Assembly: GCF_964204865.1 (NCBI RefSeq)
Contig: NC_135259.1
Coordinates: 16,802,001 to 16,866,000 of the forward strand
Origin: Styela clava
Taxonomy: Eukaryota
Length of the DNA stretch: 64,000 bases
Direction: 5' to 3'
The notes beneath the pieces are model-generated. The model had not been told where the DNA came from. It saw only the letters and a program-made list of their open reading frames with translations, and did not search any database. Below are positions 8,387 through 63,580 of this stretch, piece after piece (position 1 is the first letter of the stretch; each line of letters opens with the position of its first letter). Made by a program: the position numbers and the translations under genes.

Positions 8387-10739
8387 ATGGAATATTATGT
8401 AAATTGTCAAAGTGAAAATGAATATGAAACCCCTCAAACTGCTTCAGGGCCGCCTGTGATTCCTAAACAAGGTTTGTGTTTTATTTGATTTGCAAAAAAT
8501 TTAATTTGTGAAATTTCAATAGAAAAAATAGATATAGTATGTAAACAAAAATGGGAATACATTATGTGCCCCGCTTTGCATTTCAGGAGAAATGGATGTG
8601 GTAACACTTCATTTCGGGTAAAAATATGAATTTTGTTTACATGAGTCGTTCAAGGTATGAATTTCCAAGCTCGTATTCTTTAGCGGCTGCAGACACGGTA
8701 ACATGGGTCAACTGCTTTGGCTTGCCTGCTAAAACCACATGTTCAACTTGAGCAAGATTTCCAACCAGTGCGACCATCCATTCACGCTCCGTAGCTTGCC
8801 CCGCCTCATCTACAAAATATTCCTATTTTTTGTAGTAATATTTGAGAAAAACCTTAAAAAAATATAATTAATTCATACATAAGTATGACAAGAGTAATAT
8901 TCTATGTGATCTCATATACGACAAGTCTATTATTGACGTTTCACATATATTTTTTTCATAGACAACAATAAAGCTACGAATACGAAAACTTTGTTTGTCC
9001 TGGGGATATTTCTGGGAATCTGCACGTTAGTGTCTGTTGCTGCATTTATTTTGATTATACAAGTTAGTATAGTTATCGTGTATTTTCGATATTTATCCAA
9101 TTTTGAATTTAAATTAACTTTATGTACTACTTTATTAAACCGATTATTTATATGATACGATTTGCTTTAAATTTTTTTCAAGCTTCAGGACGAAATGAAA
9201 CTTATGAGAGAAAAACTGGACACGTTAAAAACGACTCTCAAAAACGTAAGATATATCAATTTATAATCGAATTGTGTCATTTAAATTACCAACAAATTTT
9301 TATCATTTATTTTTTTCTGTTAAAACTTTGAATAAAAGGACAACGGAATTAAATTCCAATCTTGCAAAAATTTGAAATGGAATACAAAAAAGTAAATTAA
9401 AGTAAGCAACGCTTTCAAAAAAAGAAGTAAAAACGACGTCTAAAATCAAAATCTATCTATTCTAGATTGACAAATTTTCACATTTTATTTTACTTTCAGA
9501 ACAAATTGAAATAGTACAGAAGCTAGCAATAAAATTCAATTCTTCCTGTACAAAGATCTTAAACAAAAATTAGGTTGTTATTATCAATATTTCAAATAAT
9601 GAATGAATCCCTTGAGAAAGAATAAAAACAAGAAAGATACTTTTAAATAAAATCTACTATAAATTTCAATTAAAACGCGCCAATTCTGAATATAGAAAAT
9701 TTATTGTTGTATTCAATAAACATTTAACCGAGAATATCAGTCGGAGACCGAAGACTTATCGATCGGAGGTTAGGAGATCCCCCAAAACAGCGCTCTTACT
9801 CCATAGTGACACCGTGTGTCCCATCACTAATTAGTTAATAACTCGCTAATTATACGACATAATTCATCGAAAATTTAATTGTTTTCGTGAGATATCACAT
9901 GTATCTAACAAACAAACAAAGAAACAGACAAATACCTATCAACCTATATCTTAAGATCGATAAGTAATAACCTCATTAGAAATAGAAGTCGAAAAAATAT
10001 TGCTGCTGATATTGCTTTTATGGTTGGAAAATTTAGATCAAAATATTTTAAAATTCTATTCAAGATTTGAATCCTATTTTAAAATCCTAGTTTAACTTTA
10101 TTTCACAGAACACAAACCTGACTGATGCAAATTCTTGGATGAACGAAATGTTTTCCCTATCCGGATGGTTCAGAGCAAGCAATAATCTCATTTATAAACG
10201 TTTCACTGATTCTGTCAACTACGCAACTGCAAAGGCTCAATGTGAAGAAATGGGAGCTCGTTTAGTATCGACTGGAATAAGGGACAACAAAGTGAAAATG
10301 TATGTTAGTGGTGGGTTACATTACGAAATAACGTGAATTTGTAGTCATCGATTGTAGTTCGATGAAGCAGGTGGAAGATTCATATGAACTGTTATTTTTA
10401 AGGGAATTATGTCTTGATAATAATCGTTATTGTAGTTTTACTACAAAAAATCTGAAACTGACCGTAATTATTATTATTCCATTTAGTGAAATATTCCCGA
10501 AACATTACTTAGCCGGAGTTAGTGCATGGATAGGATTGGACGACATCAGAAATGAAGGAATTTGGGTTTGGTCGGATGGCGTAAATGAATCACCAAATTC
10601 TCTTTGGGATGCGCCAGAACCAAACGGCGGTAGAACCGAAAACTGCGTAGAAGTAGTATTCTATAATTCGACATTTGTTGGCAATGATGCTCCTTGCACT
10701 CTTTTCCGTCGTTTTGTTTGCGAAAGGGAGGTCAATTAA
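8387..10739 (+). CDS. G2: type II TM C-type lectin receptor, short neck, about 230 aa, EPN/GND
   Basis: Exons 8387-8471 (MEYYVNCQSENEYETPQ...), 8962-9062 (TM LFVLGIFLGICTLVSVAAFILII), 9183-9245, 10109-10299 and 10487-10739; total 693 nt, open frame. Confidence 0.8.
8637..8822 (-). pseudogene. MOV10/UPF1-like SF1 RNA helicase fragment, antisense in G2 intron 1
   Basis: Minus strand reads YFVDEAGQATEREWMVALVGNLAQVEHVVLAGKPKQLTHVTVSAAAKEYELGNSYLERLM*, matching the DEAGQ, LAGDPxQL and SxLERL motifs. Confidence 0.8.
9732..9967 (-). mobile_element. Non-autonomous Helentron-like (HINE/DINE-1-type) element in a G2 intron
   Basis: 11-bp sub-terminal inverted repeats ACTTATCGATC (9754-9764) and GATCGATAAGT (9955-9965), an adjacent hairpin TCGG-AGA-CCGA and an (ACAA)n microsatellite. 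Absent from the paralogous G12 intron. Confidence 0.6.
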
Positions 10740-11533
10740 TGTTCTCCTGAATGAATTTCCCTTTCACAAAACATTGCTTGATTTGAATTCAAAAATATTT
10801 TATGATTTTGCGATTTAATTTACTGTTAGTTTAACCTTGAAAAAAGTGAACTTATTTAAACAAATATGAAGTTTTTTTTTAATTCAATTATTTACGTTAT
10901 TATTTTTTATTTTAGAGTTGTTTCTCAAATTTACTATCTTTGACTAATGACCATAATATCATACTTTTATTTTGTCTGAATCGAACGACCAAAAAAATTG
11001 CAAATAGGTCTTTCATTTTGGAAGCGTTTATTTTTAATTATTGAAAACATTTTAACAATTTGATATTAATTTAAATCTTGATCAAACAGTTATCAAGAAA
11101 AAGTGAAATTAAGTTGCTGAACGATTTTTCTATTTTGCATTCTACAATTGAATCATTTTGTTTAATCACAAAATTCACTTTAAATGCTGAACGTCTAACC
11201 TAAAGTTTTAATAAAGCCACCGCAAAATAGGTATATACATATATTCGGATACCTATTTGCGAAAAAAAAAGCCCAAGTTGAATGAATGAGATTTACGATC
11301 CTACCGAACTAAGTAAGGCCAGACTGGCTGAGCAAACATTCTGAGCAAAATTTTTGTTAAACACATAAGAGGTATCTCTTTTCTTTATGTTTTTCGCTTT
11401 AAATTAGGATTCCTGTTTCAGTGCTTCGTTAATTTTATTTGATGAATTTACTTCAGAAAGATGAAGATTGCACAGATAATAAATAAATGTCATTGACATC
11501 GTTATGCCTCTTGCTGTTATAGATACTCTAGAC

Positions 11534-15769: not shown

Positions 15770-17916
15770 TTATTCAAATTCCCTTTCGCAAACAAAACGA
15801 TTGACAGCTGAACAGGCTACATCATTACCAACAATCTTTGTATTATAGAATATTATTACGCAGTTTTCGGATGAACCCCCGTTAGGTTCCCCCGATGCCC
15901 ATATTGCACTTGGCGATCCATTAACATCATCCGACCAAACCCAAATTCCTTCGTGGCTGATGTCGTCCAATCCAATCCATGATCCTCTGGTTAAGTAATG
16001 TTTCGGAAATATTTCACTGGATGGAAAACAAAATATTACACATCGAGTTATTGTTTGTAGTGAAATTACCATATCAATTGATTGCGTTTAGAAATACCAG
16101 TTCTTGAGTATCTTCAACTGGCGATATCCAGAGAGGTTAATCTTGGAGTCAAAATTGATGACCAAAAAATTCCAGTAATTGTTTCAAATTATGTTAACGT
16201 CTCACATAATACGCTAACTTACTTTTTTACTTGGTTGTTCCTCATCCCAGTTGATACCAAACGAGCTCCCAATCTTTCACATTGAGCCTTTGCAGTAGCG
16301 TAGTTGACAGAATAAGTGAAACGTTTGTAAATGAGATTATTGCTTGCTCTGAACCATCCGGATATCGAAAACATTTTGTTCATCCTCGAATTTGCTTCAG
16401 TCAGGTTTGCGTTCTGTAAAGCAAACTGAGTTATAAATATAACTAAATTTGTTTTCATGTTACCGATGCAACTATAACTAGATGCAACATAAACAATAAT
16501 AGATTTTTTATGCGTATTGTACAAAAATAATATTCATATTTATATAAAAAATTATAGAAAGCAAATCTATTTGATCCCTGTTTCTTAAACTCACCAATTT
16601 GGTATCTCCAATCAATATTTTGGAGTCGAGTTGGCTCACTTCATTCTTCATATTTTTCAACTCATCTTTTATACTTGAAGATGCTGAAAATTTATCAAAA
16701 ACATAAAATTATGCAACTAATCACATTTTTTAGATCTAACGCAGTAATATTTTTACACAGAATCTTAACATAATATACTTTGATACTGAAGCGTTAGAGA
16801 AATCAGGTGACCAACTTACCTTATCAATTAAATTTTGTTTTTATATTTTATGTTTCGTTTTTACTCCGATAAACTAAGTTAAACTTGATAAAACAAAGAT
16901 TCGATGAAAAGTTGAAATAAAATATAAAATATGAACTTACTTTATTGTGGTTTCTAGGGAACTTTTATAAAGAAAGTATTGAAATGTGTTGCCGGTTTTT
17001 CAAATGATTCGACTCAGTTATAAGTTTAATAATATAAACTTAACATTTTGTGTTTCATTCGAAATCTTCGCAAGGGACGAATTGAACTGAGTTGTCAATT
17101 TTTCCAAAGTTTTCACTTGTTTTTAAATTTGAAAAAACTAAATCATGCTTATATATAATTGGCATTTTTTGACTAAAATCAATATATCATACTTTTTTGA
17201 GTGTCGTTTATTTTGATGGCGAGAGATGAATCAATCTCACTAAATTTGTCCAATTTTTCTTTCATTCCATTCATCTCGTTCTGGAGCTTATAATAAATTT
17301 TAACATTTCAGATGAACGAATTATTACAAAAATAGGAAAAAATATATTTTTGTACAATGCGCATATTTTTCTTTGATTTTATTATATAGAACACTAGAGT
17401 AAGTTTAATTTTCACTAAGTTTACTAATTAACTTCATTAAGTTTACTAATTAACCTGCATAAACAGGATAAATGCAGCAACCGACACTAGGACGCAGATT
17501 CCTAATGATATCGCTAGAACAATCAGAGTTTTCTTGTTTGTAGCTTTATTGTTGTCTGTGGAAAAAAAACGTCTATAAAAGGAATTTCAAAACAGAGATT
17601 TCCTAAGATAAAAAAAATATTTTCTGTTCTATTCTATGTCAAAATAAGGCAAACACAAATTGTTGCGACATTGATGTAAAATAGCTGATTTCATATGGAT
17701 AAAATAGGTTATTTTCATTTTTAAAAGCCTGAGAGGTTTCACCATGCCTGTTTACTCTTGTATTATATTTTTTAATTTTTCTTGTTATAGTACAAATTAG
17801 AATTTGAGTTTAATCAAACACAAACCTTGTTTAGGATCTGCAGGTGGCCTTGAAACAGTCGAGGAGATTTCATATACATTTTCACTTTGACCATTTACAT
17901 AACATCCCATCTCCAT
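15770..17916 (-). CDS. G3: type II TM C-type lectin receptor, about 270 aa, EPN/GND
   Basis: Exons 17916-17826 (MEMGCYVNGQSENVYEISS...), 17555-17455 (TM), 17286-17193, 16683-16595, 16413-16223 and 16016-15770; total 813 nt, open frame. Confidence 0.82.
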
Positions 17917-19508: not shown

Positions 19509-19593
19509 ATGGAATGTTATGCAAATTTTCAGAGTCAAAATATATATGAAACCGCTCAGACTGCTTCAGAGTCACAAACGATTCCTAAACAAG
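19509..19593 (+). pseudogene. Exon-1-only relic of a lectin gene (head-to-head partner of G3)
   Basis: MECYANFQSQNIYETAQTASESQTIPKQ with intact donor and the start of intron 1. Sequence then jumps to 3'-flank-type DNA at about 19760. Confidence 0.8.
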
Positions 19594-20205: not shown

Positions 20206-20260
20206 GAGGGGTTTCATATACCTTTTGACTTTGAACATTCGCTCAGCATTCCATCTCCAT
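20206..20260 (-). pseudogene. Truncated exon-1 relic (head-to-head partner of G4)
   Basis: Reverse complement is ATGGAGATGGAATGCTGAGCGAAT...GTATATGAAACCCC, with a stop at the first Tyr codon. Confidence 0.7.
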
Positions 20261-21213: not shown

Positions 21214-23570
21214 ATGGATATGGAATGTTATGCAAATTTTCATAGTCAAAATATATATGAAACCCCTCAAACTGTTTCAGGGCCACCTGCGTTTCTTAAA
21301 CATGGTTTGTGTTTGATTAAACTTAAATATGAATTTGTAATATAACAAGGAAAAATAAAAAAATAGGATACAAGGGTAAACATGCATGGTAAACCTTCTT
21401 CGGCTTTCAAACATGCAAATATCATTACTTTTCTCCATATGAAATCAGCTATTTTACAGGAATGTTGTAACAAATTTTAATTGCCCTATTTTTACGTAGA
21501 ATAAAAAAATGAGTAATTCCTCATGAAATCACTTTTTCAAATGCCTTTCATCCACGTTTTTATTTTCCACAGACAACAAGGAGGCTACGAACAAGAAAAC
21601 TCTGTTTGTTTTCGCGATATCTTTTGGAATATGCTTCATTGTGTCTGTTGCTGCATTTATTCTGATCATCCAAGTTAGTTAGTAGTGGGAATTAAATTAA
21701 GCCTAATGTTCCATATATTAAAATCAAATAAAAAAATTCGTATCGTACGAAAAGTTGTTAATTCTGTTCAATTTCGTTTTTTGAAATATTCAAATTTATT
21801 TTAAGCTCCATAACAAGATGAATCGTATGAGAGATAAATTGGACAAAATGAGTGAGATCGATTCATCCCTCGCCAGCAATATAAACGACACTCAAAAAAG
21901 TACGATATATTGATTTTAGTCAAAACATGCCAATTGTATATTAGCCTGATCTATTTTATCGAAAATAAAAACAAATGAAAACTTTTGCAATATTGACAAA
22001 GCAAAGATTTCAAATAAAACACAAAAGAGTAGGTTTATATATGTTATTAATGACAAGGCATCGCATTTCAAAAGCTTGGAAACGACATTCAAAAACGAAA
22101 ATTATTTTGAATTTCAATGAAAATTTGCCAATGGCATGCCAATTAAGTTTAACATTTGTTTTACAACTTATAAATAGTCCAGACATTTGAACAATTGGCA
22201 ACGCTTTTTAATTTCTTCATAACAAAATTTCCAAGAAAACACAGAAAAGTAAGTTCATATTTCAGATATTTGAATTTTTGATCAAGTTTTTGCTTCAGAA
22301 GGCTTAACATGGTTTATCGAAGTAAAAACAAAACATGAAATTAAAAAATATATATTAATGAAAAAGTAAGCTTGTCACCTGCCTTCTCTGATGCTTCAGA
22401 ATCAGAATAAATTATATTGGAATCATTCGTAAAAACTTACTGCGTGCGATCTAAACCTGTGATTAGTCAACATTTTTTATGTTTTCAAATAAATTAATAA
22501 ATTTTCAGTTACTTCAAGTATAAAACATGAGTTGAAAAATATGAAGAATGGATTGAGCCAACTTGACTCCAAAATATTGATTGGAGATAACAATTTGGTG
22601 AGTTTGAGCAACAAGGAACTATTTCCTTTGTCTATCTATAATTTTCTTTAGTATGAATTATAAAAGTATATGAATATTATTTTTGCACAATAAACGTAAA
22701 AAACGAACATATTGTTGTTTATGTTGCATCTAGTTATACAGAAACATGTAAAAACACAATGTTTCAGGGTTATTTTAAACTTAGTTTGCTTTACAGAAAG
22801 CAAACGTGACTGAAGCAAATTTGAGGATGAACAAAATGTTTTCGATATCCGGATGGTTCAGAGCAAGCAATAATCTCATTTACAAGCGTTTCACTGATTT
22901 TGTCAACTACGCTACTGCAAAGGCTCAATGTGAAGAAATGGGAGCTCGTTTGGTTTCAACTGGAATTAGGAACAACCAAGTGAAAAAGTAAGTTAGTGAC
23001 TTGTGTTAGAAACGTTAACACTCTTCTTTTACTTTCAGTACTTTCAGTTAGATCCAGCAGTATCTATAGGTTTCTACAGTACAAATGAAATGTATTTTTA
23101 AATGTTGTTGTTATTGACGTAAAAGCCACTATTTACCTCACTCACTACTAGTTAATATATCTTGTCAGTATGGAAATTAATTACCAAAAACTCATTTCAA
23201 ATTTGTTCACAATATTTTTTGGCACTTTGTAACATGTTTTCATTTCTTGCACATGTGAGCTGTAATATGTAAATATGGCTATAAATGAAGCTTTAACTTT
23301 CAGTAAATAATAATTCTGCATCTTCTTAGTGAAATATTCCCGAAACATTACCTAACTGGAGCGTATGCATGGATAGGATTGGACGACATAAGCAAGGAAG
23401 GAATTTGGGTTTGGTCGGATGGAGGAAATGAATCAACAAGCGCAATATGGGAATCGTCACAACCAAACGGGGGCAGAAGCGAAAACTGTGCAGTAATCAT
23501 ATTGCCTGGTGCTCTTGATATTGCGTGCTCTGTAGTCCAAAGATTTGTTTGCGAAAGGGAATTTGCATGA
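21214..23570 (+). CDS. G4: type II TM C-type lectin receptor, about 268 aa, QPN/ALD
   Basis: Exons 21214-21304 (MDMECYANFHSQNIYETPQ...), 21573-21673, 21806-21899, 22509-22597, 22797-22987 and 23330-23570; total 807 nt, open frame. Confidence 0.82.
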
Positions 23571-25062: not shown

Positions 25063-25135
25063 TGAAATATTTTCGGTACATTCCCTAGCCGGAACTAGTG
25101 CAAGGATAGGATTGGATGATATACATTAGCAATAA
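25063..25135 (+). pseudogene. Orphan CTLD-B exon fragment
   Basis: ag|TGAAATATTTTCGGTACATTCC...GGATAGGATTGGATGA. Occupies the same position relative to G4 as the 2937 relic does to G1. Confidence 0.7.
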
Positions 25136-27347: not shown

Positions 27348-29912
27348 ATGGAAATTGAATGTTATGCAAATGTTGAAAATATTTATGAAACCGCTCAGAC
27401 TGCTTCGAGACCACCTTCAATTCCAGAACAAGGTTTGTGTTTCGTTTTGGTAACTTAAATTCTAATTTGTAATATAATGAGAGAAAATGAAAAATATTCA
27501 AATGTCATTTTCCTTATGAAATAAGGTATTTCACAGCAATGCCGTGACAAATTTTAATTGCCCTATTTTTACGTATAATAAAAAATGAGTAATTTTTTTT
27601 ACCTCATGAAATATATATTTTTTTAAAACCCTTTCGTCCACGTTTTCTTTTCCACAGACAACAATAAAGCTACGAACAAGAAAACTATCTTTGTTGTCAC
27701 AGTATCTTTTGAAATATACTTCATTGTGTCTGTTGCTGCTTTTGTCCTCCTGATTACGCAAGTTCGTTAGTACTGGGAATTTAATTAAGTCTTATGTTTT
27801 ATATAATGAAATCAAATAAAAATATGCGTATTGTACAAAAGTTTGTTTGTTTTCTACTTCAGTAATAATCGCTTCATTTGAAATAGTCAAATTTATTTTA
27901 AGCTCCAGAACAAGATGGAACATATAACAGAAAAATTGAACAAAATGAGTGAGATTGATTCATCTCTCGCCAGCAATATAAACGACACCCAGAAACGTAT
28001 GATATATATATATTTCAGTCGAAACATGCCGATTGTATATTAAAATAAATTATTTATATAAAAACAAGTGGAAACTTTTGAACAATTGACAACGCAGTTT
28101 AATTCTTCCCTCGCAAAGATTTCAAATAAAACACAAAAAAGTAACTCAATATTATTAGTATGTTAATAACTATGCATCGCTTTTGGAAATATTGAAAACG
28201 ACAATCGAAAATCTAATTTATTTTCCGCATGCATTACTTGTATTTTAGGTTGTCAAAAACTTTCATATTCTGGGGACTGTTTCAGTTTAGTTCCGACAAA
28301 TTTTTGTTAACGTCTTCATAACGCTCTCTCAATGTTATTTTTTGTTCATAGCCTACAAATTATTGCTACGTAATTTAGTCTATCCCTTCCCCATGGTTTC
28401 TGATAATCTGTTGTTGCATCCATTTTCTGCAACCTAATCCGTGAAGATTGATAACTAAATTACTGGAGACTTATTTTTGTTCCCATGAGTGCACCAAGAA
28501 AGTTAGCTAGAGCAGAGCCTTTAAAAAGAAAAGGATTGTCAACTATTTTTTATTGAAGTTGGATCAACCGCTGTGTGTCTTGAATGCCGAAAAAGCGTTG
28601 CCGTTTAAAAATAATAAAATATAATTTAAATCTTAGTGCGTGAGATCAAAAATTTGATTAGTCACTTGATTTTATGTTTTCTAAAAAATTTCCAGCTTCT
28701 CCAAGTATAAAAATTAAGAATGAAGTGAGACAACTTGACTCCAAAATACTCACTGGAGATAACGAATTGGTGAGGTTAAGCAACAGGGACCAAATAAGTG
28801 CCTATAATTCTTTTTTCATCAATTCCAAATGCATATGAATATTATTTTTGTAATATAAACTTAAATAAAAAGAAATATTGTTGTTTATGTTGCATCTTGT
28901 TATACAGTAACAGGTACACAAAACAATATTTCAGGTTTATTTATAATTTAGTTTGATTCACAGAAAGCAAACTTGACTGAAGCAAATTTGAGGATAAACA
29001 AAATGTTTTCGATATCAGGATGGTTCAGAGCAAGCAATAATCTCATTTACAAACGATTCACTGATTCTGTCAACTACGCGACTGCAAAGGCTCAATGTGA
29101 AGGAATGGGAGCTCGTTTGGTTTCGACTGGAATTAGGAACAACAAAGTGAAAAGGTAGGTTAGTAATTTGTGTTAGGTAAGTCTAAACTCTATTTGTCGT
29201 GTACTTTTATTTAAATTTATCAGTATCTATAGGTTATTACAGTACAAAATAAATATATTTTTAGATGTTGCTGTTATTGTCGTAAAAGCCACTACGTACT
29301 TACTTTCTCTATTACTTAATAAATATTTCAAAATATTTCTCGTCAATATAGAAAGTATTTACCAGAAACTCATTTTAAATTTGTTCACAATTTTTTTGAA
29401 ATTTGATAGCTCGTTGTCTCACTACAAATTTCGCACATATTGAAACGAAACAGCGTAAGTATCCTCTTATTAACTTTGGCGAGATGAAAAAACGCTTACG
29501 TTGACACAAGTCAAAAATAATCATTCATGAATTAAAGATAAAACGTACCAATAAATTTTAACCTTTTTCATTTCTACATGTGAACTCTAATATACGAACA
29601 GAATTTGGATACAAAAATAGCTCTAAGTGTCCGTAATTAACAATTCTGCATTATCTTAGTGAAATATTCACGAAACATTACCTAACCGGAGCGTATGCAT
29701 GGATAGGACTGAACGACATCAGCAATGAAGGAATTTGGGTTTGGTCGGACGTAGTAAATGTATCGCCAAGCAAGATATGGGCACCGGCGGAACCAACCGG
29801 AGGCTTAAACGAAGACTGCGCACATATGATATTATTGAATTCCAAACTTGATGTTTACGATGGTGGCTGTACTGGTCCCCATCGATTTGTTTGCGAAAGT
29901 GACTCTGCATGA
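27348..29912 (+). CDS. G5: type II TM C-type lectin receptor, about 266 aa, EPT/VYD, Glu in TM
   Basis: Exons 27348-27432 (MEIECYANVENIYETAQ...), 27658-27761, 27903-27996, 28696-28769, 28964-29154 and 29660-29912; total 801 nt, open frame. Confidence 0.8.
28230..28620 (+). mobile_element. Degenerate hAT (Charlie/SPIN-like) 5' fragment in a G5 intron
   Basis: Sequence absent from paralogous introns. About 28540-28610 reads, with a frameshift, YFFIEVGSTAVCLECRKSVAV, resembling the N-terminal zinc-finger region of these transposases. Confidence 0.5.
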
Positions 29913-34705: not shown

Positions 34706-34843
34706 CCATTTTGTCGCGTGATTCGTCTTAATGTTTCTGTGTTCAGCTGACTAATTCTAATGTGATGTTGTACCCCTATAAAATGGTTATCAGAAGCAAG
34801 ACTTTGATCAGATAGGAGGAAGATCACAACATATAGCGTTGAC

Positions 34844-41095: not shown

Positions 41096-41388
41096 AATCT
41101 CTTTCACCTTGTCAAATTCTTCTCTCATATGTTTCATCTCGTTCTGGAGCTTTAAATAAATTTGAATATTTCAAATAAACGGATTATTATAAATATAGAA
41201 AAACAAAAAACTTTTTATTCAACTTGCGCTGATTATTTGGTTTCTGCGAGACTAACTACTTATCCTTCTTCTATGTTTTTGTGCCGGTGGATCCGTATGC
41301 ATATATTGCAAGGATGCTGTAGCAAGAGTAGAGATAACAATCCTAAGTGATTCAAGAGTCTTGCTGCACACTAACACAAATATATTTC

Positions 41389-41428
41389 TGTAACGTTTCG
41401 TCTGACCAAGGTCAGACTTCTTCAGACA
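41389..41428 (-). ncRNA. Minimal type I hammerhead ribozyme (minus-strand copy)
   Basis: Exact reverse complement of 41506-41545. Confidence 0.72.
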
Positions 41429-41505
41429 TACATAATTCAACCATCAGACATACCATCATACCATCAGACAACCAACCAGACATACATAATTCCTTGAATT
41501 ATGTA

Positions 41506-41545
41506 TGTCTGAAGAAGTCTGACCTTGGTCAGACGAAACGTTACA
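41506..41545 (+). ncRNA. Minimal type I hammerhead ribozyme
   Basis: UGU-CUGAAGA-A-[GUCUGACC uu GGUCAGAC]-GAAAC-GUU-ACA: conserved core boxes, perfect stem II, palindromic loop-less stem III and 3-bp stem I. Confidence 0.72.
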
Positions 41546-44114: not shown

Positions 44115-46516
44115 ATGGAATGCTATGAAAATTTTCATAGACAAAAAATAGATGAAGCCCCCCAGTCTGCTTCTGGGCCACCTGCGATACCTAAACAAGG
44201 TTTGTGTTTTATTTGACTCACCCAAGATTTATTTTTCAAATTACATAGTAAAACTAGATAGAATATGTAAACACATAAAATATAACTATTTTTGAGCAAT
44301 GCTGTAAAAAAATTGAATTGATTCATTCGGGTCAAGTATGACACGAGTATTATTCTATATTGTGTTTTCTCTTACGAAATTCCACGTTTGAAATCTTACA
44401 TATATTCGTTTTTTTATAGAGAACAATGAAGGCACAAAAAAGAAAACTTTGATTGTTTCTGCAATATCTTTGGGAATCTCCTTCTTAGTGTCTGTTGCTG
44501 CATTTATCCTGATTATGCAAGTTAGTATAGACATCGTGTATTTTCGATGTTTATTTGTCACTGAAATTAAATTAAGCTCACTACAGCGCGATAAATTAAT
44601 AAAAACTTATAGTATTGAAGAAGCTATTTGTTCTCCACTTTTGAATCTCCATTTATTTGCATTTCTAAATTTATTTTAAGCTTCAAAACGAGATAAAATA
44701 TACGAAGGAAAGATTAGAGAAAATGAGTGAGACTGATTCATCTCTGGCCAACAATATCAACGACACTCAAAAACGTAAGATTTTCAAAAAATTTTCAAAG
44801 CGCCAAGTAAATCATCGATGTTGGAGTTTTATTTAAAAACTTAGGAACGAGTCGAAGCTCTTGAAAAGCTGGAAATGGATGTCAAGTCGTCCCTTGTGAA
44901 GATTTCAAATGAAAGACAACAAAATGAGTCGATATAAATATTATAAATATTATGATTTATTATAATATGAATATAATTAAAATTTAATTAAATATGAATT
45001 TTTAAAATTGCGCATCATTTATTCGCCTCAAGTGCTTGAACACAGTAAAGCGAAAAATATAATCAAATGAGCAAATGAATTAAGCATGGTAATTTGTTTC
45101 AAGAATTTCGCAAACGCTCGCAGCAACAGACGCAAAAGAATACAATATGGTATGTTGAAAAATTTCGTAGAATATCCTATTTCATGAAGTCAGATCGAGA
45201 AATTCTATGCTTTTGCTATTTTTTAGATATTTGAATTAAAATTTCAGGTTCTTTGAAAACAAAAAGTGAGTTGGAAACTTCAATTAAAACAGAAGTGAGT
45301 GAGCTGAACTCCAAAATACACAACGGAGATAATAAATTGGTGAGTTTGTGACTCATAACATGACGTGTTTTATTAGGAAAATAAAATGACTTATAATCAC
45401 GTGGCAACATTAATTCAACTCAATTTATATGTGCTACGTTTTATGAATATCTACTTTTATTACTGAGGAGTTATAAAATTTATTGTTGTACTCAAGAACG
45501 GCTTAAATAACCACATTCCAAATAGAACTTAATTAAACAAAATGCTTGCTTATAATTTTTTTACATTTTATAGTTGGAAAATTTAGTTCATAATATCCCA
45601 GTATTATTTATGCGTAATTTCATTTTATAGAATAAAAGCCTATCTGATACAAATTCGAGAATTACTGAAATGTTTTCGATATCCGGATGGTTCAGAGCGA
45701 GCAATAATCTCATTTACAAACGCTTCACTGATTCTGTCAACTACGCGACTGCAAAGGCTCACTGTGAAGGAATGGGAGCTCGTTTGGTATCGACCGGAAT
45801 TAGGAACAGCCAAAATAAAAGGTCGGTAGGTGGTTTGTGTGAGAAACTTGAGCATATTTCGTTGGGATTTTCCAAAACCTTGCTTTTTATGAAAAATAGT
45901 GTGGATTTAAGTTATCTGTGAATACATTATAAAATGTTACACCACCAATGACATATATGTTTTTAAAAAAGGAAAGCACGCAGATTTACTGGACCTACAA
46001 TGCTTTTTCCAGTAAGGAAAATATATATTTTATACTCCTTTCTAGTGTTCCAAATCAAAGTTTGCTAATTTGAATGTACATTAGTTTTCCGAAGATATAT
46101 TTTGACAAGCTGAAGAGACACGTGCATTGAAATAAGTTGAAATTAATATTCCACATGCATACATTGTGCATTTGCATTTGTACGGTGCTCCTTTCTTCCA
46201 GTAAACTGGTATTTTCAATGGGCATCGAATTATAATAAAAAAACGTCTGTAAATATTAATTTGTTTTCCATTCAGTGAAATATTTCCGAATCAGTATTTA
46301 ACTGGGGCGTATGCATGGATAGGATTGGACGACATCAGCAGTGAAGGAACTTGGGTTTGGTCAGATGGAGCAAATGGTTCACCAAGTGCAATATGGGAAT
46401 CGTTAGAACCAAACGGCGGCAGAAAAGAAAACTGCGCAGTAATCAGATTATCTGGTGTTATTGATGTTGCGTGCTCTGAAATCCATCGACTTGTTTGCGA
46501 AAAGGAATTTGCATGA
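44115..46516 (+). CDS. G9: type II TM C-type lectin receptor, about 267 aa, EPN/VID, single cytoplasmic Tyr
   Basis: Exons 44115-44199 (MECYENFHRQKIDEAPQ...), 44420-44520, 44681-44774, 45248-45339, 45631-45821 and 46276-46516; total 804 nt, open frame. Confidence 0.8.
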
Positions 46517-53565: not shown

Positions 53566-55462
53566 TTATTCAAATTCCCTTTTGCAAAGAAAAGGATTGA
53601 AATTTGAACAAGGTGCATCATATCACCAACAATCTTCAAGTTATAGAATAATACTACGCATTTTTCGAATCTGTGCAATTTGGATCCATATTGCATCTGT
53701 CGATCCATGAACACCGATCAAACCCAAATTCCTTTGTGGCTTATGTTGTCCAAACCAATCCATGAAAAAGCTTCGGTCAAGTAAGGTTTCGGAAATATTT
53801 CGCTGGGTGAAAAAGAAAATATTACACATCGTGTTATTTTTTGCAGTGAAATTACCATATCAATTATTATTTATGGGTTAGTTTCCTATTGCGTTTAGAA
53901 ATACTAGTTTATAAGAACCGTCAACTGGCGATATCCAGAGAGGTTGATCATGGAGTCAAAATCGATTATCAAAAAATTCCCGTAATTGTTTCATATTATG
54001 TTAACTTCTCACATAATTCGTTTACTTTTTTACCTTGTTGTTACTCATTCTAGTTGATACCAAACGAGCTCCCGATCCTCCACATTGAGCTTTTGCAGTA
54101 GCGTGATTGACATGACAAAATCAGTGAAACGTTTGTAAATGAGATTATTGCTCGCTCTGAACCATCCGGCTATCGAAAACATTTTGTTCATACTCCAATT
54201 TTCGCGTGTTTTCATGTTGGCTCACTTTATTCCTCATACTTGAAGAAGCTGAAAGTTTATTCAAAAACATTAAACTAGGCAACTAATCACATTTTCGTAT
54301 CTAGAGACTTTTAATATAACTAACTTTGATTCTAAGTCGTCAAAGAAGTCAGGTGACCAGCCTACTTTATCAATTATATCGTTTTTAGATTTTATGTATG
54401 GTTTTTATTTTGATAAACTATGTCTAACCTGATAAAGCAAAGCTGATAAAACAAATACTCGATGCAAAGTTCAAATATCTAAAATATGCACATACTCTTT
54501 TATGTTTTCTTGCAAATTTTTGGGAGGAAGGAATTGAATTGCGTAGCTATTTTTTTTTTAATTTCTCGACTATCTATAAGTTTTAAATCAAATGTTAAAC
54601 TTCATTGACCTACCATGGAAATTTTAAATAACATACGTTTTTGAGTGTCGTTTCCCAGCTTTTGAAGTGCGATGCTTAGTTATTAACATATTATTAATAT
54701 AAATTACACGTTTGTGTTTCATTCGAAATCTTTGCGAAGGACAAATTGAACTGTGTTGTCTATTTTTCAAAAGTTCCCACTTGTTCTCAAATTAAGAAAA
54801 AAATAATTTATGCTGATACAATTCTGAATTCAATATATCTTACGTTTTTGAGTGTTGTTATATTGTATCAATATTTCACATAAACGGATTAGAACAAATT
54901 TAGAAAACAAAAAACTTTTTGTACAATATGCATAATTTCATTTAATTTTGCTATATAGAACATTAGACTTAGTTTAATTTCCTGTACTAACTAACTTGCA
55001 TAATCAGGATAAATGCAGCAATGGACAATAAGAAGCAGATTCCGAAAGATATCACCACAACAAACAATGTTTTCTTGTTCGTAGCTTTATTGATGTTTGT
55101 TAAAAGAAAACGTGGATAAAAGGCATTTCAAAAAAGAAATTTCATGATGTAAAAAAAATGATTCATATTTATTGTTCGTAAAAATAGGGGAATTAAATTT
55201 TGTTACGGCATTGGTGTAAAATAGATAATTTCATATGGAATATATGATATTCGCATTTTTGAAAGCCGGAGACGTTTCACCATGCCTGTTTACCCTTGTA
55301 TCCCATTTTTTAATTTCTATTGTTTTAGTATAAATTAGATTTTAAATTATTTAATCAAATAAAACACAAACCTTGTTTAGGAACCGCAGGTGGACCTGAA
55401 GCATTCTGAGGGATTTCATATGCATTTTCACTTTGACCATTTACATTACATTCCATCTCCAT
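53566..55462 (-). pseudogene. G11: lectin pseudogene
   Basis: Exon 1 55462-55372 (MEMECNVNGQSENAYEIPQ...). TM-exon acceptor lost; deletions in neck exons; frameshifting insertion in CTLD-A; stop (WV*) and deletions in CTLD-B 53802-53566. Confidence 0.82.
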
Positions 55463-56731: not shown

Positions 56732-58708
56732 ATGGAGATGGAATATTATGTAAATTGTCAAAGTGAAAATGAATATGAAACCCCTCAAACTGCTTCAGGG
56801 CCACCTGTGGTTTCTAAACAAGGTTTGTGTTTTATTTGATTTCCAAAAAATTTAATTTGTTAATTTACATTAGAAAAACTAGATATAGTATGTAAACACA
56901 AATGGGAACAGAGCATGTGCCCTGCTTCGCATATAAATCAATGAGATAACACTTTTATTCGGGTAAAAGCATCTGTTCTATTTAAGCACTATTTCCAGAC
57001 AGTGCGACCGTGCATTCAGGCTCCGTAGCTTGTCCCGACACATCCACTCGAATATTCATATTTTTTGTTCTTGTAATATTTGAGCAAAACTCTGAAAAAG
57101 TAGAATTTTGTCATACACGCCAATTATGACACGAGTAATATTCCATATAATCAATATACAAAATGTCTATTATTGACATTTTATATATTTATTTTTTCAT
57201 AGACAGCAATAAAGCTAAGAATAAGAAAACTTTGTTCGTTCTCGCGATATCTCTAGGAATCTGCTTATTAGGGTCTGTTGCTGCATTCATCCTGATAATA
57301 CAAGTTAGTATAATTATCGTGTATTTTTGATATTTATTCGATTATGGAATCAAATTATCTTCATGTACTACTTTATAAAACCAATTATTTATATGATACT
57401 ATTTGCTGATTGTTTTCCACTTTTGTCTTTCTCTATTTATCTGCAATGTTTAAATTTATTTTAAGCTTCAAAACGAGATGAATCTTATGAGGGAAAAACT
57501 GGACACATTAAAAGCGACACTCAAAAACGTAAGATAGACGTTTTTAATCAAATCATGTCATTTAATTACCGAAAGAAAAATTTTATTTTTTTTGTTAAAA
57601 TAATTGAATTAAAGGTTAGGAACTAAATTCCTATCTCGCGAAAATTAATGAAACACACACAAAAAAAGGTTTAAGTAAGCACTTTCAATAAATTGTATAA
57701 ACGACATCTAAAATCAAAATCTATCAATTCTAAATTACCACTTTCATATTTTATTTTAGTTTCAGAACAAATCAAAATAGTAGAAAAGCTAGCAACAAAA
57801 TTCAACTCATCCTGTACAAAGATTTTGAACAAAAATTAACTTTTTATTGTTAATGGCTCAAACTAAGATAATTCAAACAATGAGCCAATCCTGAATAAAG
57901 AAAATTTGGCATTGTAATCAATAAACGTTTTCCTAACAACATTAGAAATAAGAGTTGAAAAAATATTGCTGTCTATATTGCTTTTATCTTTTAAAAGTTT
58001 TTAAAAGTCAATCTTACATTTATTTTACAGAACACAGTTCTGAATAATACAAGTTCTAGGATGAACAAAATGTTTTCGATATCCGGATGGTTCAGAGCAA
58101 GTAATAACCTTATTTACAAACGTTTCACTGATTTTGTCAACTACGAAACTGCAAAGGATCAATGTGACGGAATGGGAGCTCGTTTGGTATCGACTGGAAT
58201 AAGGAACAACACACTTAAAAAGTATGTTAGTGGTGGCTTATATTACGAAACAACGTGAACTTTTAGTCATCGATTTTAGCTCGATGAATAAGTTGAGGAT
58301 TCATAGGCACTGTTTTTTCTAAACGGATCGTGATTTGAAAAAAACTAATCCATACATAATAATCGTTATGGTAATTTTACTTTAAAAATATCTCAAACTG
58401 TATAGTAATTTTCTTGCAGAAACCCTGAACTATTCATAATTATTTATATTGCTTTTAGTGAAATATTTCCGAAACATTACTTAACTGGAGTTAGTGCATG
58501 GATAGGATTGGACGACATCATCACTGAAGGAATTTGGGTTTGGTCGGATGGCGTAAATGAATCACCAAACTCTCTTTGGAATGCGGCAGAACCAAACGGC
58601 GGTAGAACTGAAAACTGCGTAGAAGTATTCAATAATTCGACTATTGTTGGCAATGATGCTCCGTGTACTCTTTTTCGTCGTTTTGTTTGCGAAAGGGAAT
58701 TTGATTAG
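56732..58708 (+). CDS. G12: type II TM C-type lectin receptor, short neck, about 231 aa, EPN/GND
   Basis: Exons 56732-56822 (MEMEYYVNCQSENEYETPQ...), 57203-57303, 57466-57528, 58031-58221 and 58459-58708; total 696 nt, open frame. Closest paralog of G2. Confidence 0.8.
56990..57055 (-). pseudogene. Internally deleted MOV10-like fragment in G12 intron 1
   Basis: Reverse complement GTGGATGTGTCGGGACAAGCTACGGAGCCTGAATGCACGGTCGCACTG = VDVSGQATEPECTVAL. Confidence 0.7.
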
Positions 58709-61393: not shown

Positions 61394-63580
61394 TCATGCA
61401 AATTCCATCTCGCAAACAAATCGGTTGTTGTAGGAACATAACAGATCAGCAACGCCAATTTTTGAATTGAAAAATAGTATGGCTGCACAGTTTTTGCTTC
61501 TACCACCGTTGGGTTCTCCCGTTCCCCACATTGTGCTTGTCGAATCATTTGTTCCATCCGACCAAACCCAAATTTCTTCATTGCTGATATCGTCTAATCT
61601 TATCCATGCATAAGCTCCGGTTAGGAAATGTCCCGGAAATATTTCACTAAAAAGATGCAATATCATTAATTACTTACAATTAGAGCTTCATAGCTTCATA
61701 GTTTCGTTTGGTAAGTTTTATCATCGTGAAAGTTTAATTGCGGCTTGTCTCAAAATAGGCGTTCCATCATCTTGCAAAAACTAATCAGCGCTACCATCGC
61801 TACAAAAAAAGATTGTGAACAAATTTAAAATGATTTAGTGAGTACTTTTTAGTAGTTACATTTTGAGCTATTAATAATTTTTGAACTAATTCTTTAGTAT
61901 TCAAAGAAAACTATTTTTGTTTTGACACTACAATTATGGGTCTACAAAACAAACATTAAAAATAAATATTCTTCACGGAACTAACTAACTTACTTTTTGA
62001 CTTGGATGTTCCTAATTCTAGTCGATACTGAACGAGCTCCCATTCCTTCACATCGAGCCTTTGCAGTTGCTCAGTTGGCAGAATCAGTGAAACGTTTGTA
62101 AAAGAGATTATTGCTGGCTCCGAACCATCCGATAATGGAAAATAATTTGTCAATTTTCGAGTTTGCCTCAGTCAGGTTTTCTGTCTGTAAAGCAAACTAA
62201 GTTTGAAATTAACCTTAAATATTATGTGTTTTCATGTTACTGTATAACTAGATGCAACATGAACAACATTTTTTTTCACGATCATATATATACCTTTAGA
62301 ATTCGTGGTAAATTATAGATATGTAAATATATTTGATCCCTGTTGCTTAAACTCACCAATTTGTTGTTTTCGATGAATATTTTGGAGTCGAGTTGACTCA
62401 CTTCATTCTTCAATATTTTCAACTCATGTTTTATACTCGACGATGCTAAAAATTTATTTGAAAGCGTAAAATTTGGTGACTAATCATATTCTAGAAACCA
62501 ATCAGTAAGTTTTTTTACAGCGACTTTGAATATAAATTTCTTTGAGTCTAAAGCGCCAATCGTCAGAGGGGTCAAGTGACTAACTTTTCTCATCATTTAT
62601 ATGTGTTTTTAAATTTTAAGTTTTGTTTTTGCTTTGGTGAATCTCAAAAGAAATTCAAACTAACTCGCGTTTTTGAATTTTGTTTCTAAGATTTTTAAAT
62701 GCAATGCATAGGTATTAGCATATTAGTATTATAAACTTGCTTTTCTGTGAATCATTTGAAATCTTCGCGAGGGACGAACTGAACAGTATTGACAATTTTT
62801 CAAAAATTTCAACTTGTTCTAAAATTTAAAAATAGTATTTATGTTCATGTACAACTGGCACGATCCGACTGTGATCAATGTATCTTACGTTTTTGAGTGT
62901 CGTTTATAATGATGGACAGAGATGAATCAATCTCACCCATTTTTTCCACTTTTTCCCTCATATGATTCATCTCGTTCTGGAGCCCAAAATAAATTTGAAT
63001 ATTGAAGAAAAATTACAATGGTAGTTTTTGTATATAAATTTAATTATATCATTTAGTTCATTAAACTTCAATTAATTCACAGTTACAGAAAGATAAAACA
63101 CGGAATATCTGAACTAACTTGCATAATCAGAATAAATGCAGCAACAGACACTAAAAAGCAGATTCCCGAAGATACCGCGAAAGCGAACCAAGTTTTCTTG
63201 ATATCATGCTCATTGTACTCTATAAACTAGAATTATGTGGATAACGTATGTAATGAAAATTTCAAAAAAATAATTGGAAGGAATCAGAAAACATTGAATC
63301 CCGTCTCATTTGTTTTAAGTAATTTCACCTCGTTTTTCCATGACATTACTAAAATTTGTTGTTCACTATTGAAAGAAAGATGATAGTAAACTTTCCTCAT
63401 AAAAAAGTGTTCGTATTTGCGTTTCCTCGTTTTATCGTTTACTTGGTATTTCAATATTACAAATTACACTGGAAGTTATCAAATAAAACACTAACCTTGT
63501 TCAGAAATTGGATGTGGTCTCGAAGCAGCCTGAGCGGTTTCATATGCATTTTGCCTGTGATCATTTTCATAATATTCCAT
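61394..63580 (-). pseudogene. G13: complete lectin gene structure with a nonsense codon in CTLD-A
   Basis: Exons 63580-63496 (MEYYENDHRQNAYETAQ...), 63219-63119, 62982-62889, about 62817-62741 (GC donor), 62445-62357, 62184-61994 and 61646-61394. TGA replaces TAC at 62073-62071. Confidence 0.75.

What the first reader, a model, noticed from the sequence alone, without database searches (positions are those of the whole stretch)
8387..63580. Non-canonical tandem tyrosine motif (Y-x-N ... Y-E-T-P) in the tail, varied per paralog
Seen exon-1 tails: G2/G12 YYVNCQSENEYETP; G7 YYANGQSENTYETP; G4 CYANFHSQNIYETP; G5 CYANVENIYETA; G3 CYVNGQSENVYEIS; G13 YYENDHRQNAYETA; G9 CYENFHRQKIDEAP (second Tyr lost); G8 second Tyr to Cys; G11 first Tyr to Asn. 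Known: pY-x-N binds Grb2-type SH2 domains, pY-x-x-P binds Crk/Nck/Abl-type SH2 domains, and acidic residues before Tyr favour kinase recognition. It is neither ITAM nor ITIM. Inference: a distinct adaptor-docking module whose output differs among paralogs; Y-x-N is kept in every complete open gene.
Basis: partly seen in the sequence, partly recalled or inferred. Interest (0 to 1): 0.75.

Follow-up and report, generated by a model that had tools for sequence, protein, structure and literature searches.

The report
Tyrosine boxes in sea-squirt lectin tails
A cluster of sea-squirt sugar-binding receptor genes starts with a short inner tail carrying two tyrosine boxes that resemble known docking and uptake signals of vertebrate immune lectins, so it is probably a new example of a known design.

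Summary
All ten quoted tails are at the stated places. They are the first coding exon of small type II transmembrane C-type lectin genes of Styela clava. About 40 copies exist, all within one 225-kb cluster.

Exon 1 is transcribed and spliced in frame to the membrane exon, and 9 of 18 database proteins of the family show the same join.

Across 16 intact, non-redundant genes:
- Y6, N8, Y15 and E16 changed 1, 1, 2 and 1 times, against a mean of 3.2 per column.
- The Pro at Y+3 changed 7 times and is kept in only 8 of 16, so "Y-x-x-P" is not a family feature.

The statistics are weak. Column rates fit a Poisson scatter (p=0.14), and the tail's dN/dS is 0.76 (0.45–1.29). "Y-x-N in every open gene" fails outside the window.

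Y-x-N is the known Grb2-SH2/ITT-like motif. A Tyr-5 "YENF" box is already known in human CLEC10A, and half the paralogs also fit Y-x-x-Φ. S. clava has Grb2 and Crk.

Verdict: a plausible, untested member of a known kind; modest interest.

The parts
8387..8471 (+). G2 exon 1 (tail MEYYVNCQSENEYETPQ...), ends in phase 1 at a GT donor
   Evidence: All exons are open, but the database model P0073 for this gene lacks exons 1 and 2.
17826..17916 (-). G3 exon 1 (MEMGCYVNGQSENVYEISS...)
   Evidence: An RNA contig covers 17826-17934 with 0 differences in X1. That contig runs on into exon 2b at 17259-17286, skipping the membrane exon.
19509..19593 (+). Distal exon 1 used by G4 (MECYANFQSQNIYETAQ...)
   Evidence: A GT..AG joint 19591->21571 (cut +2) is seen in 3 of 4 runs laid. 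Database protein P0064, from the duplicated copy, has the same join.
20207..20260 (-). Dead exon-1 fragment; the first Tyr codon is a stop
21214..21304 (+).
   Evidence: Only one low-depth, unspliced contig lies on it, in X2. Its counterpart in the duplicated copy has a stop at the first Tyr.
21573..23570 (+). Rest of G4: membrane exon 21573-21673, neck exons 21806-21899 and 22512-22596, lectin-domain exons about 22797-22987 and 23330-23570
   Evidence: RNA joints; tblastn hits. Pfam Lectin_C matches the equivalent exon of G2 (8e-10) and P0064 (1.3e-13).
27348..27432 (+). G5 exon 1 (MEIECYANVENIYETAQ...), the short form with a 2-residue gap between the boxes
   Evidence: database protein P0001
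31982..32075 (-). G6 exon-1 remnants in two frames (first Tyr is His)
34844..34934 (+). G7 exon 1 (MEMKYYANGQSENTYETPQ...)
42043..42127 (-). G8 exon 1 (second Tyr is Cys); the gene lacks its lectin exons
44115..44199 (+). G9 exon 1 (MECYENFHRQKIDEAPQ...); second Tyr is Asp, all exons open
   Evidence: the database model P0002 lacks exons 1 and 2
55372..55462 (-). G11 exon 1 (first Tyr is Asn); pseudogene
   Evidence: The exon-2 acceptor AG is changed to AA.
56732..56822 (+). G12 exon 1 (MEMEYYVNCQSENEYETPQ...)
63496..63580 (-). G13 exon 1 (MEYYENDHRQNAYETAQ...); the gene has a stop in lectin exon 3

Best explanation
Exon 1 encodes the 28-35-residue cytoplasmic N-terminus of oligomeric type II C-type lectin receptors of Styela clava. 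The layout is tail, one membrane helix, a coiled-coil neck of variable length, then a Ca-type lectin domain. The two tyrosine boxes are short linear motifs kept by selection in an otherwise fast-drifting tail. Box 1, [E]-x-Y-x-N at residues 4-8, most likely acts after tyrosine phosphorylation as a docking site for a Grb2-type SH2 domain (pY-x-N). In about half of the paralogs, those with F, V or L at +3, it also fits the Y-x-x-hydrophobic internalisation signal, as in CLEC10A 'YENF'. Box 2, N-x-Y-E-[T/I], is a second phosphotyrosine site whose reader is unresolved; the +3 Pro is not part of it. Paralogs that have lost one box (G9; #13/#34; #31) would be uncoupled from that output. Shown here: gene structure, splicing, in-frame continuity with the membrane exon, the pattern of conservation, and presence of Grb2 and Crk. 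Inferred: cytoplasmic topology, phosphorylation, which SH2 binds, and any downstream effect.
For: All ten quoted tails are present. Exon 1 is spliced GT..AG to the membrane exon in 3 of 4 RNA runs. 9 of 18 database proteins of the family start with this tail and continue into the membrane segment. The C-terminal domain matches Pfam Lectin_C, and the nearest solved chains are MRC2, DEC-205, collectin-11 and DC-SIGN(R). Lys-rich residues precede the single hydrophobic segment, and N-x-S/T sites lie after it. In 16 intact non-redundant genes, replacement events per column were Y6 1, N8 1, Y15 2 and E16 1, against a mean of 3.2; the flanking x positions had 4-7. dN of these four codons is 0.060 against 0.293 for the rest of the tail. 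Y6 is kept in 15 of 16 intact copies but 6 of 12 decayed copies (Fisher p=0.023). Three older-assembly variants (P0003, P0065, P0074) differ from the window genes at 11 tail positions, none of them at Y, N, Y or E. The genome encodes a Grb2 orthologue with SH3-SH2-SH3 order; 41 of 49 residues of the second SH2 half are identical to human GRB2, including the FLWVVKF stretch. It also encodes a Crk/CrkL orthologue (8e-59). Botryllus, a sea squirt (recalled, from no call: same family, Styelidae), expresses Grb2, Crk, Src, Syk and SHP-1 homologues (PMC12582321 passages). pY-x-N binds Grb2, and mutating the +2 Asn abolishes binding in DNAM-1 (PMC4647266 passages).
Against: The tail as a whole cannot be told from neutral drift: dN/dS is 0.76 with bootstrap range 0.45-1.29, and codon positions 1, 2 and 3 are equally conserved at 0.757, 0.763 and 0.786. 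Per-column change counts fit a Poisson scatter (p=0.14 over 30 columns, p=0.44 over the inner 25). So the low counts at Y, N, Y and E could be chance, and the columns were chosen after looking. Neither Tyr codon shows a synonymous change. The intact-versus-decayed test is partly circular, because Tyr-to-stop makes a copy 'decayed', and the copies are related. Apparently intact genes lack the Asn (#13/#34) or both Tyr (#31). No homologue with this tail was found outside S. clava, so cross-species conservation is untested. Database models of G2, G9 and G12 omit exons 1 and 2. For G3, the only RNA contig seen across the exon-1 donor skips the membrane exon. There is no evidence of phosphorylation or binding.
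Confidence: 0.48

Rival explanations
1. Box 1 is only a tyrosine-based internalisation signal (Y-x-x-hydrophobic, read by the AP-2 mu subunit), like Tyr-5 of the hepatic and macrophage lectins ASGR1 (YQDL) and CLEC10A (YENF). It is not an SH2 docking site.
For: It has the same protein type and the same position: a Tyr at residues 4-6 of a type II lectin with a coiled-coil neck. PMC7404283 passages give ASGR1 YQDL and CLEC10A YENF at Tyr-5 as endocytic motifs. 8 of 16 intact genes have F, V or L at +3 (YANF, YENF, YANV, YVNL). Two paralogs read exactly Y-E-N-F.
Against: The position that defines this signal, +3, changed 4 times and is Gly or Cys in 8 of 16. The +2 Asn, which this signal does not need, is kept in 15 of 16. 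It also leaves box 2 unexplained.
Confidence: 0.15
2. There is no specific function. The boxes are leftovers of a young, rapidly duplicating family, and the apparent conservation is Poisson scatter plus choosing the columns after the fact.
For: Tail dN/dS is 0.76 (0.45-1.29), and all three reading frames of exon 1 give overlapping values. The dispersion test is not significant. About 3 of the 25 inner columns would show 1 change or fewer by chance, and 4 do. Intact-looking genes lack a box. N8, Y15 and E16 are kept as often in decayed copies as in intact ones.
Against: Family-wide dS is 0.44, and the rest of the tail has dN 0.29, so there was time to lose these residues. The conserved columns are exactly the specificity positions of a known motif, and the variable ones are its x positions. 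Y6 is lost more often in decayed copies. The most divergent members (#1, #28, #30, #0) still keep Y-x-N and the second Y.
Confidence: 0.24
3. The conservation reflects the DNA or RNA, or a second reading frame. Exon 1 is also open in the +1 frame, which becomes in frame with the neck when the 2-mod-3 membrane exon is skipped. The conserved TAT-GAA (Y-E) contains that frame's ATG.
For: The +1 frame is open to the exon end, with an ATG and at least 15 codons, in 13 of 17 copies, while the +2 frame has 2-4 stops in every copy. Nominal dN/dS is lowest in the +1 frame: 0.63 (0.42-0.92). A membrane-exon-skipping contig exists for G3 in X1 and X2, and database isoform P0068 reads exon 1 in that frame. 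Third codon positions are no freer than first and second.
Against: The three frames' intervals overlap. Openness is inherited with the main-frame sequence, so 13 of 17 is not independent evidence. The main-frame ATG comes first and has A at -3 and G at +4, so scanning ribosomes should rarely reach the +1 ATG (inference). The product would have neither a signal peptide nor a membrane anchor for a disulphide-bonded lectin domain. This reading does not explain Y6 and N8.
Confidence: 0.07
4. The two tyrosines form a degenerate ITAM-like unit read by the tandem SH2 domains of a Syk-family kinase.
For: There are two tyrosines 9 residues apart in a receptor tail. CLEC10A YENF has been described as a hemITAM that triggers Src/Syk signalling (PMC7404283 passages). 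Syk homologues exist in ascidians (PMC12582321 passages).
Against: 0 of 16 genes have Leu or Ile at +3 of both tyrosines. Spacing is 9, or 7 in the short forms, against the 10-12 of ITAMs (that figure is recalled). Spacing varies within the family, and there is no acidic D-E-D run before the Tyr as in hemITAMs.
Confidence: 0.05

Closest known systems
CLEC10A (MGL/CD301) Tyr-5 'YENF' and ASGR1 Tyr-5 'YQDL' boxes
   Same: [quoted passage not shown] A single Tyr at about residue 5 carries the motif. CLEC10A's Y-E-N-F is letter for letter the box of G9 and #24. The review reports that phosphorylation of Tyr-5 is needed for internalisation and for signalling (PMC7404283 passages).
   Different: In the sea-squirt family the +2 Asn is the conserved position, not the +3 hydrophobic residue. 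There is also a second conserved Tyr box. The lectin domains are not specially close to ASGR or MGL: neither is among the 23 solved chains at E<=1e-8. Homology of the tails is not shown, so convergence is as likely.
ITT / ITT-like motifs (Y-x-N): DNAM-1 D/E-I-Y-V/M-N, DAP10 Y-x-N-M
   Same: A Tyr and a +2 Asn are conserved in an otherwise divergent tail, with an acidic residue upstream. pY-x-N-x binds the Grb2 SH2 domain, and N-to-Q abolishes binding (PMC4647266 passages). The DAP10 motif is named in PMC12582321 passages.
   Different: Those are type I or adaptor chains with the motif near the C-terminus. Here the motif sits at the extreme N-terminus of a type II lectin, and binding is untested.
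CD72
   Same: It is a type II C-type-lectin-like receptor whose tail carries two tyrosine motifs, one of which binds Grb2 (PMC7168817 passages).
   Different: CD72's other motif is a true ITIM that binds SHP-1. The sea-squirt tails have no ITIM.
Prolectin (CLEC17A)
   Same: It is a type II lectin that binds mannose and fucose. Its cytoplasmic domain has Y-X-N-X sites, is tyrosine-phosphorylated, co-purifies with Grb2, and does not mediate endocytosis (PMC2709368 passages).
   Different: Prolectin has an unusually long tail with at least three SH2 sites and eight SH3 sites. Here the tail is 28-35 residues with two Tyr.
Ascidian type II lectin receptors BsCD94-1 and CiCD94-1
   Same: They are type II membrane C-type lectin-like receptors of tunicate blood cells (PMC5465252 passages).
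   Different: Their tails were not compared, because the Botryllus paper (PMC141046) is not held. No sequence relation was tested.

Membership tests
pY-x-N (Grb2-SH2 / ITT-like) docking motif | Tyr with Asn at +2 | tested here: met
   Met in 15 of 16 intact non-redundant genes for Y and 15 of 16 for N. Exceptions are #13/#34 (Y-E-Y) and #31 (H-V-N).
pY-x-N (Grb2-SH2 / ITT-like) docking motif | The motif lies in the cytoplasm | tested here: inconclusive
   Inferred from type II layout. There is no signal peptide. A Lys-rich flank precedes the only hydrophobic segment, and the lectin domain and N-x-S/T sites follow it. No topology predictor was run.
pY-x-N (Grb2-SH2 / ITT-like) docking motif | A Grb2-type SH2 reader exists in the organism | tested here: met
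   SH3-SH2-SH3 exons lie at C1:7714498-7717739(-). The SH2 half is 41 of 49 identical to human GRB2 (8.6e-24).
pY-x-N (Grb2-SH2 / ITT-like) docking motif | The Tyr is phosphorylated and binding depends on pTyr and Asn | not testable with these tools
   Needs phosphoproteomics and peptide pull-downs.
pY-x-x-P (Crk/Nck/Abl-type) docking motif | Pro at +3 of the Tyr | tested here: not met
   Pro is present in 8 of 16 intact genes, and this is the most changed column at 7 events. It is Pro in 4 of the 9 database proteins that carry tail plus membrane segment. An RNA variant changes this residue from A to S at 19554. Crk itself is present. The SH2 class preferences are recalled, not taken from a call.
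ITAM / hemITAM / ITIM | Y-x-x-[L/I] twice at 6-8 residue spacing; or an acidic run plus Y-x-x-L; or [S/I/V/L]-x-Y-x-x-[I/V/L] | tested here: not met
   0 of 16 genes have L or I at +3 of both Tyr. The -2 residues are E/A/G/K for box 1 and N/K for box 2.
Y-x-x-hydrophobic (AP-2) internalisation signal | Bulky hydrophobic residue at +3 | tested here: inconclusive
   Box 1 has F, V or L in 8 of 16 and G or C in 8 of 16. Box 2 has I in 1 of 16.
Type II membrane C-type lectin receptor (DC-SIGN/CD23/ASGR-like architecture) | N-terminal tail, one membrane segment, coiled-coil neck, C-terminal C-type lectin domain | tested here: met
   Pfam Lectin_C at 1e-12 to 2e-14 on five database proteins. The hydrophobic exon 2 and the heptad-like neck exons are seen. 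The coiled coil is inferred from sequence only.
Type II membrane C-type lectin receptor (DC-SIGN/CD23/ASGR-like architecture) | Ca/sugar site E-P-N or Q-P-D plus W-N-D | tested here: inconclusive
   The tripeptide varies: EPN in G2, G3, G9, G12; QPN in G4, G7; EPT in G1, G5; QPD in #28. W-N-D is replaced by G-N-D, Y-D-G or L-D-I.

The most novel reading that the evidence does not exclude
This may be a sea-squirt-specific lectin receptor cluster, laid out like an NK gene complex, that signals without ITAM or ITIM. Each oligomeric receptor would carry its own N-terminal pair of phosphotyrosine boxes. Paralogs would be wired differently (both boxes, box 1 only, box 2 only, or neither), and exon 1 with its promoter would be shuffled between ectodomain lineages. 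Similar sugar-binding heads would then be coupled to different outputs. A bolder add-on is that exon 1 is read in two frames, giving a membrane receptor or, when the membrane exon is skipped, an anchor-less lectin.
Probability: 0.18. Interest if true: 0.6.

Novelty: new member of a known kind. Interest (0 to 1): 0.3.

Why it matters
If the boxes are real docking sites, a non-vertebrate chordate couples sugar recognition directly to the Grb2/Ras-type pathway. It would do so through a short tail much like human CLEC10A, prolectin or CD72. That would help to date, or show convergence of, tyrosine-based signalling by lectin receptors before adaptive immunity. Natural variants lacking one box offer ready-made controls for experiments. 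If the boxes are only drift, the cluster is simply one more lineage-specific lectin expansion.

Tried and rejected
Orthologues:
- The exon-3 profile search and the full-length search with database protein P0003 returned only S. clava proteins with this tail.
- The five 'ena' hits, P0075-P0079, are secreted lectins with unrelated N-termini.
- The more distant hits checked are all S. clava proteins with other tails.
- Cross-species conservation therefore could not be tested.

Tail exon elsewhere in the genome: no match with E<5 lies outside C13:16.647-16.870 Mb.

Pfam on the tail alone and on lectin exon 3 alone found no family.

Tree choice: counting exon-1 changes on a tree built from exons 2-4 gave inflated counts (ratio 1.11), because exon 1 and the rest give different trees. 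I recounted on an exon-1-region tree.

Finding Grb2: I did not recognise it among the 20 strongest SH2 exon hits I looked at. It was found only by looking for SH2 flanked by SH3 on one strand. L071, fetched, was not used.

Readings rejected:
- ITAM, ITIM, hemITAM and ITSM: the +3 and -2 residues do not fit.
- NPxY/PTB: the Asn before the second Tyr is at -2, not -3 (the PTB rule is recalled).
- Di-leucine or acidic-cluster sorting signals: none is seen in the tails.

Literature: searches for a paper on this S. clava family gave 12 listings, none about it by title or abstract start, and 0 papers. The Botryllus CD94 paper is not held. No supplementary files were opened; none seemed to bear on a claim here.

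Full report
WHAT IS THERE. The window holds 13 copies of this short exon. Ten are full length and belong to genes G2, G3, G4 (two copies), G5, G7, G9, G12 and the decayed G8, G11 and G13. Two are dead fragments. Each copy begins at an ATG that follows an in-frame stop. Each ends at a conserved AAACAAG|GT donor that leaves one base for the next exon.

THE GENES. Downstream of exon 1 lie four kinds of exon:
- a 2-mod-3 exon encoding a Lys-rich stretch and a hydrophobic segment of about 23 residues;
- one to several neck exons with heptad-like repeats;
- two exons encoding a C-type lectin domain.

Pfam Lectin_C matches the last exon of G2 at 8e-10, and five database proteins of the family at 1e-12 to 2e-14. 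The nearest solved chains are MRC2, DEC-205, collectin-11, DC-SIGN(R) and the Polyandrocarpa lectin. The layout is that of a type II receptor, so the tail should face the cytosol. This is inferred; no topology predictor was run.

The names on matching database proteins give the organism as Styela clava. An earlier scan note had said 'sea squirt'.

Exons were searched singly, and full-length comparisons used database proteins as returned.

EXPRESSION AND FRAME. Four runs that hold 5-17% of the words of window:15700-25600 were laid on window:17700-23600. They contain contigs with GT..AG joints, so they are RNA.

- The joint 19591->21571 (cut +2) appears in 3 of the 4 runs (X1, X2, X3). It links the upstream exon 1 at 19509-19593 to G4's membrane exon.
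- Further joints link the neck and lectin exons. They reveal a neck exon at 22512-22596 that my homology scan had missed.
Its counterpart in the duplicated copy has a stop codon.

Of the 18 database proteins of the family that I read:
- 9 begin with this tail and run on into the membrane segment;
- 1 has the tail without a membrane segment (P0070);
- 1 reads exon 1 in another frame (P0068);
- 7 lack exon 1, among them the models for G2, G9 and G12.

For G3, a contig identical to exon 1 continues directly into neck exon 2b, skipping the membrane exon.

So exon 1 is a real first coding exon, though not every gene has been shown to use it. Translation itself has not been shown.

THE WHOLE FAMILY. 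A profile of the tail finds 42 matches in the 377-Mb genome. Every match with E<5 lies in C13:16.647-16.870 Mb. I fetched that region and chained 55 genes or fragments. About 35 kb, including the first 23 kb of the window, is duplicated some 96 kb away at 96.4-98.4% identity. I therefore dropped near-identical copies.

That left 17 apparently intact genes. One of them (#54) turned out to have a frameshift in the membrane exon, leaving 16.

In these 16 genes:
- Y6 is kept in 15, N8 in 15, Y15 in 14 and E16 in 15.
- The Pro at +3 of the second Tyr is kept in 8.

Exceptions in intact-looking genes are #13/#34 (Y-E-Y; database protein P0063 is full length), #31 (H-V-N, with the second Tyr also lost) and G9 (second Tyr is Asp).

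HOW STRONG IS THE CONSERVATION?

For the motifs:
- On a tree of the exon-1 region, the four columns Y6, N8, Y15 and E16 changed 5 times in all, against 12.7 expected under an even rate. The x positions next to them changed 4-7 times each.
- dN of the four codons is 0.060, against 0.293 for the rest of the tail, with a family-wide dS of 0.44.
- Y6 is kept in 15 of 16 intact copies but 6 of 12 decayed copies (p=0.023).
- Three older-assembly variants differ from the window genes at 11 tail positions, and none of these is a motif position.

Against:
- The tail has the highest dN/dS of all exons: 0.76 (bootstrap 0.45-1.29), against 0.34-0.47 elsewhere.
- Its three codon positions are equally conserved.
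- Counts per column do not depart from a Poisson scatter (p=0.14; inner 25 columns p=0.44).
- The columns were picked after looking.
- N8, Y15 and E16 are kept just as often in decayed copies.
- The intact-versus-decayed contrast is partly circular, because Tyr-to-stop is itself what makes a copy 'decayed'.

The evidence is suggestive, not decisive. What is non-random is which columns are quiet: exactly the specificity positions of a known motif.

READING THE MOTIFS. Box 1 is [E]-x-Y-[A/V/E/T]-N-x. This is the Grb2 SH2 consensus pY-x-N-x. In DNAM-1 a similarly isolated D/E-I-Y-V/M-N stretch in a divergent tail binds Grb2, and N-to-Q abolishes the binding (PMC4647266, passages).

In 8 of 16 genes the +3 residue is F, V or L, so box 1 also fits the Y-x-x-hydrophobic uptake signal. 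Human CLEC10A has exactly Y-E-N-F at Tyr-5 of a type II lectin, and ASGR1 has Y-Q-D-L. The review says Tyr-5 phosphorylation is needed for internalisation and signalling (PMC7404283, passages). Because the +2 Asn is conserved and the +3 residue is not, I favour SH2 docking, with uptake as a second role in some paralogs.

Box 2 is N-x-Y-E-[T/I]-x. A Crk/Nck/Abl-type Y-x-x-P site is therefore not a property of the family. The SH2 class rules here are recalled, not taken from a call. I could not assign box 2 a reader.

ITAM, hemITAM and ITIM patterns are not met in any of the 16 genes.

READERS. The genome has at least 33 SH2-matching exons.
- A Crk/CrkL orthologue lies at C3:16710156-16710677 (8e-59 to human CrkL).
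- A Grb2 orthologue with SH3-SH2-SH3 order lies at C1:7714498-7717739. The second half of its SH2 domain is 41 of 49 identical to human GRB2.
- Botryllus, a sea squirt (recalled, from no call: family Styelidae), expresses Grb2, Crk, Src, Syk and SHP-1 homologues (PMC12582321, passages).

KNOWN RELATIVES OF THE IDEA. Type II lectin receptors with Grb2-binding tyrosine sites are already known:
- CD72 (PMC7168817, passages);
- prolectin/CLEC17A, which is tyrosine-phosphorylated and co-purifies with Grb2 (PMC2709368, passages);
- CLEC10A.

So the motif is not a new kind. What is new is its carrier: a lineage-specific tunicate cluster. I found no paper on this cluster (listings only), although its genes are in the public annotation under generic names.

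RIVALS.
- Uptake signal only: 0.15.
- Drift with no function: 0.24.
- Constraint from the +1 frame or from the RNA: 0.07. The +1 frame is open in 13 of 17 copies and has the lowest nominal dN/dS. However, the strong main-frame ATG comes first, and the product would lack any anchor or signal peptide.
- ITAM-like unit read by Syk: 0.05.

VERDICT. It is a plausible but untested new member of the pY-x-N / Tyr-5-box class of lectin receptor tails. Interest is modest.

LIMITS.
- No other tunicate genome or proteome with this family was reachable, so the decisive cross-species test is missing.
- RNA evidence comes from assembled contigs of 4 runs from 2 studies, and covers only G4 and the first exon of G3.
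- Phosphorylation and binding cannot be addressed here.

Noticed in passing
window 19509-19593 and 21214-21304: G4 has two exon-1 copies 1.7 kb apart. RNA contigs in 3 of 4 runs splice the distal one to the membrane exon. The proximal one shows only an unspliced low-depth contig, and in the duplicated copy it carries a stop.
   Followed up: partly
window 17826 joined to 17286 (minus strand); exon 1 of all paralogs: An RNA contig joins G3 exon 1 to neck exon 2b, skipping the 2-mod-3 membrane exon. Database isoform P0068 then reads exon 1 in the +1 frame. That frame is open with an ATG in 13 of 17 copies and has the lowest nominal dN/dS at 0.63 (0.42-0.92). The conserved TAT-GAA of box 2 contains its ATG.
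   Followed up: partly
window 1-23240 plus 12 kb upstream, versus G000:C13:16693491-16730206: A segment of about 35 kb carrying G1-G4 is present twice in direct orientation about 96 kb apart, at 96.4-98.4% identity. It is either a recent segmental duplication or an uncollapsed second haplotype.
   Followed up: partly
window 22512-22596; proteins P0006, P0063, P0066: The neck is built from a variable number of small exons. P0006 has three repeats of a unit of about 45 residues, while G2 and G12 have a short neck.
   Followed up: partly
last exon of each gene, e.g. window 10488-10737, 23331-23567, 29661-29909: The sugar/Ca site varies between paralogs. The tripeptide is EPN, QPN, EPT or QPD, and W-N-D is replaced by G-N-D, Y-D-G or L-D-I. 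This suggests diversified or lost sugar binding.
   Followed up: no
about 70-80 bases upstream of each exon-1 ATG, e.g. window 8311-8330, 56655-56675: A TATAAA-like box travels with each exon-1 copy, and in G2 it reads TATGAA. The RNA contigs for the distal G4 exon start further upstream, at 19365-19404.
   Followed up: no
cluster C13:16.647-16.870 Mb: Trees from the exon-1 region and from exons 2-4 group the genes differently (for example #31, #28, #54). This hints at exchange of exon 1 between ectodomain lineages or at gene conversion. Branch support was not assessed.
   Followed up: no
window 19554: RNA contigs of runs X1 and X2 read T for G. This changes the residue at +3 of the second Tyr from Ala to Ser, and could be an allele or a paralog.
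   Followed up: no
window 55372-55462 and 48953-49615 (minus strand): Database protein P0070 joins G11's exon 1 to the lectin exons of G10, with no membrane segment.
   Followed up: no
L070 (G000:C1:7713800-7718300, minus strand); L051 (G000:C3:16710000-16711000, minus strand): These loci hold the Grb2 and Crk/CrkL orthologues of S. clava. The L050 reading frame looks Csk-like, judged by eye only.
   Followed up: yes
protein P0012 (S. clava, another chromosome): A more distant type II lectin has a longer tail that also contains a Y-Q-N-P box and a P-P-L-P stretch.
   Followed up: no
window 41223-41593: An earlier scan note (s1-813403) flags a palindromic element with two hammerhead ribozymes inside the G8 remnant. 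I did not look at it.
   Followed up: no
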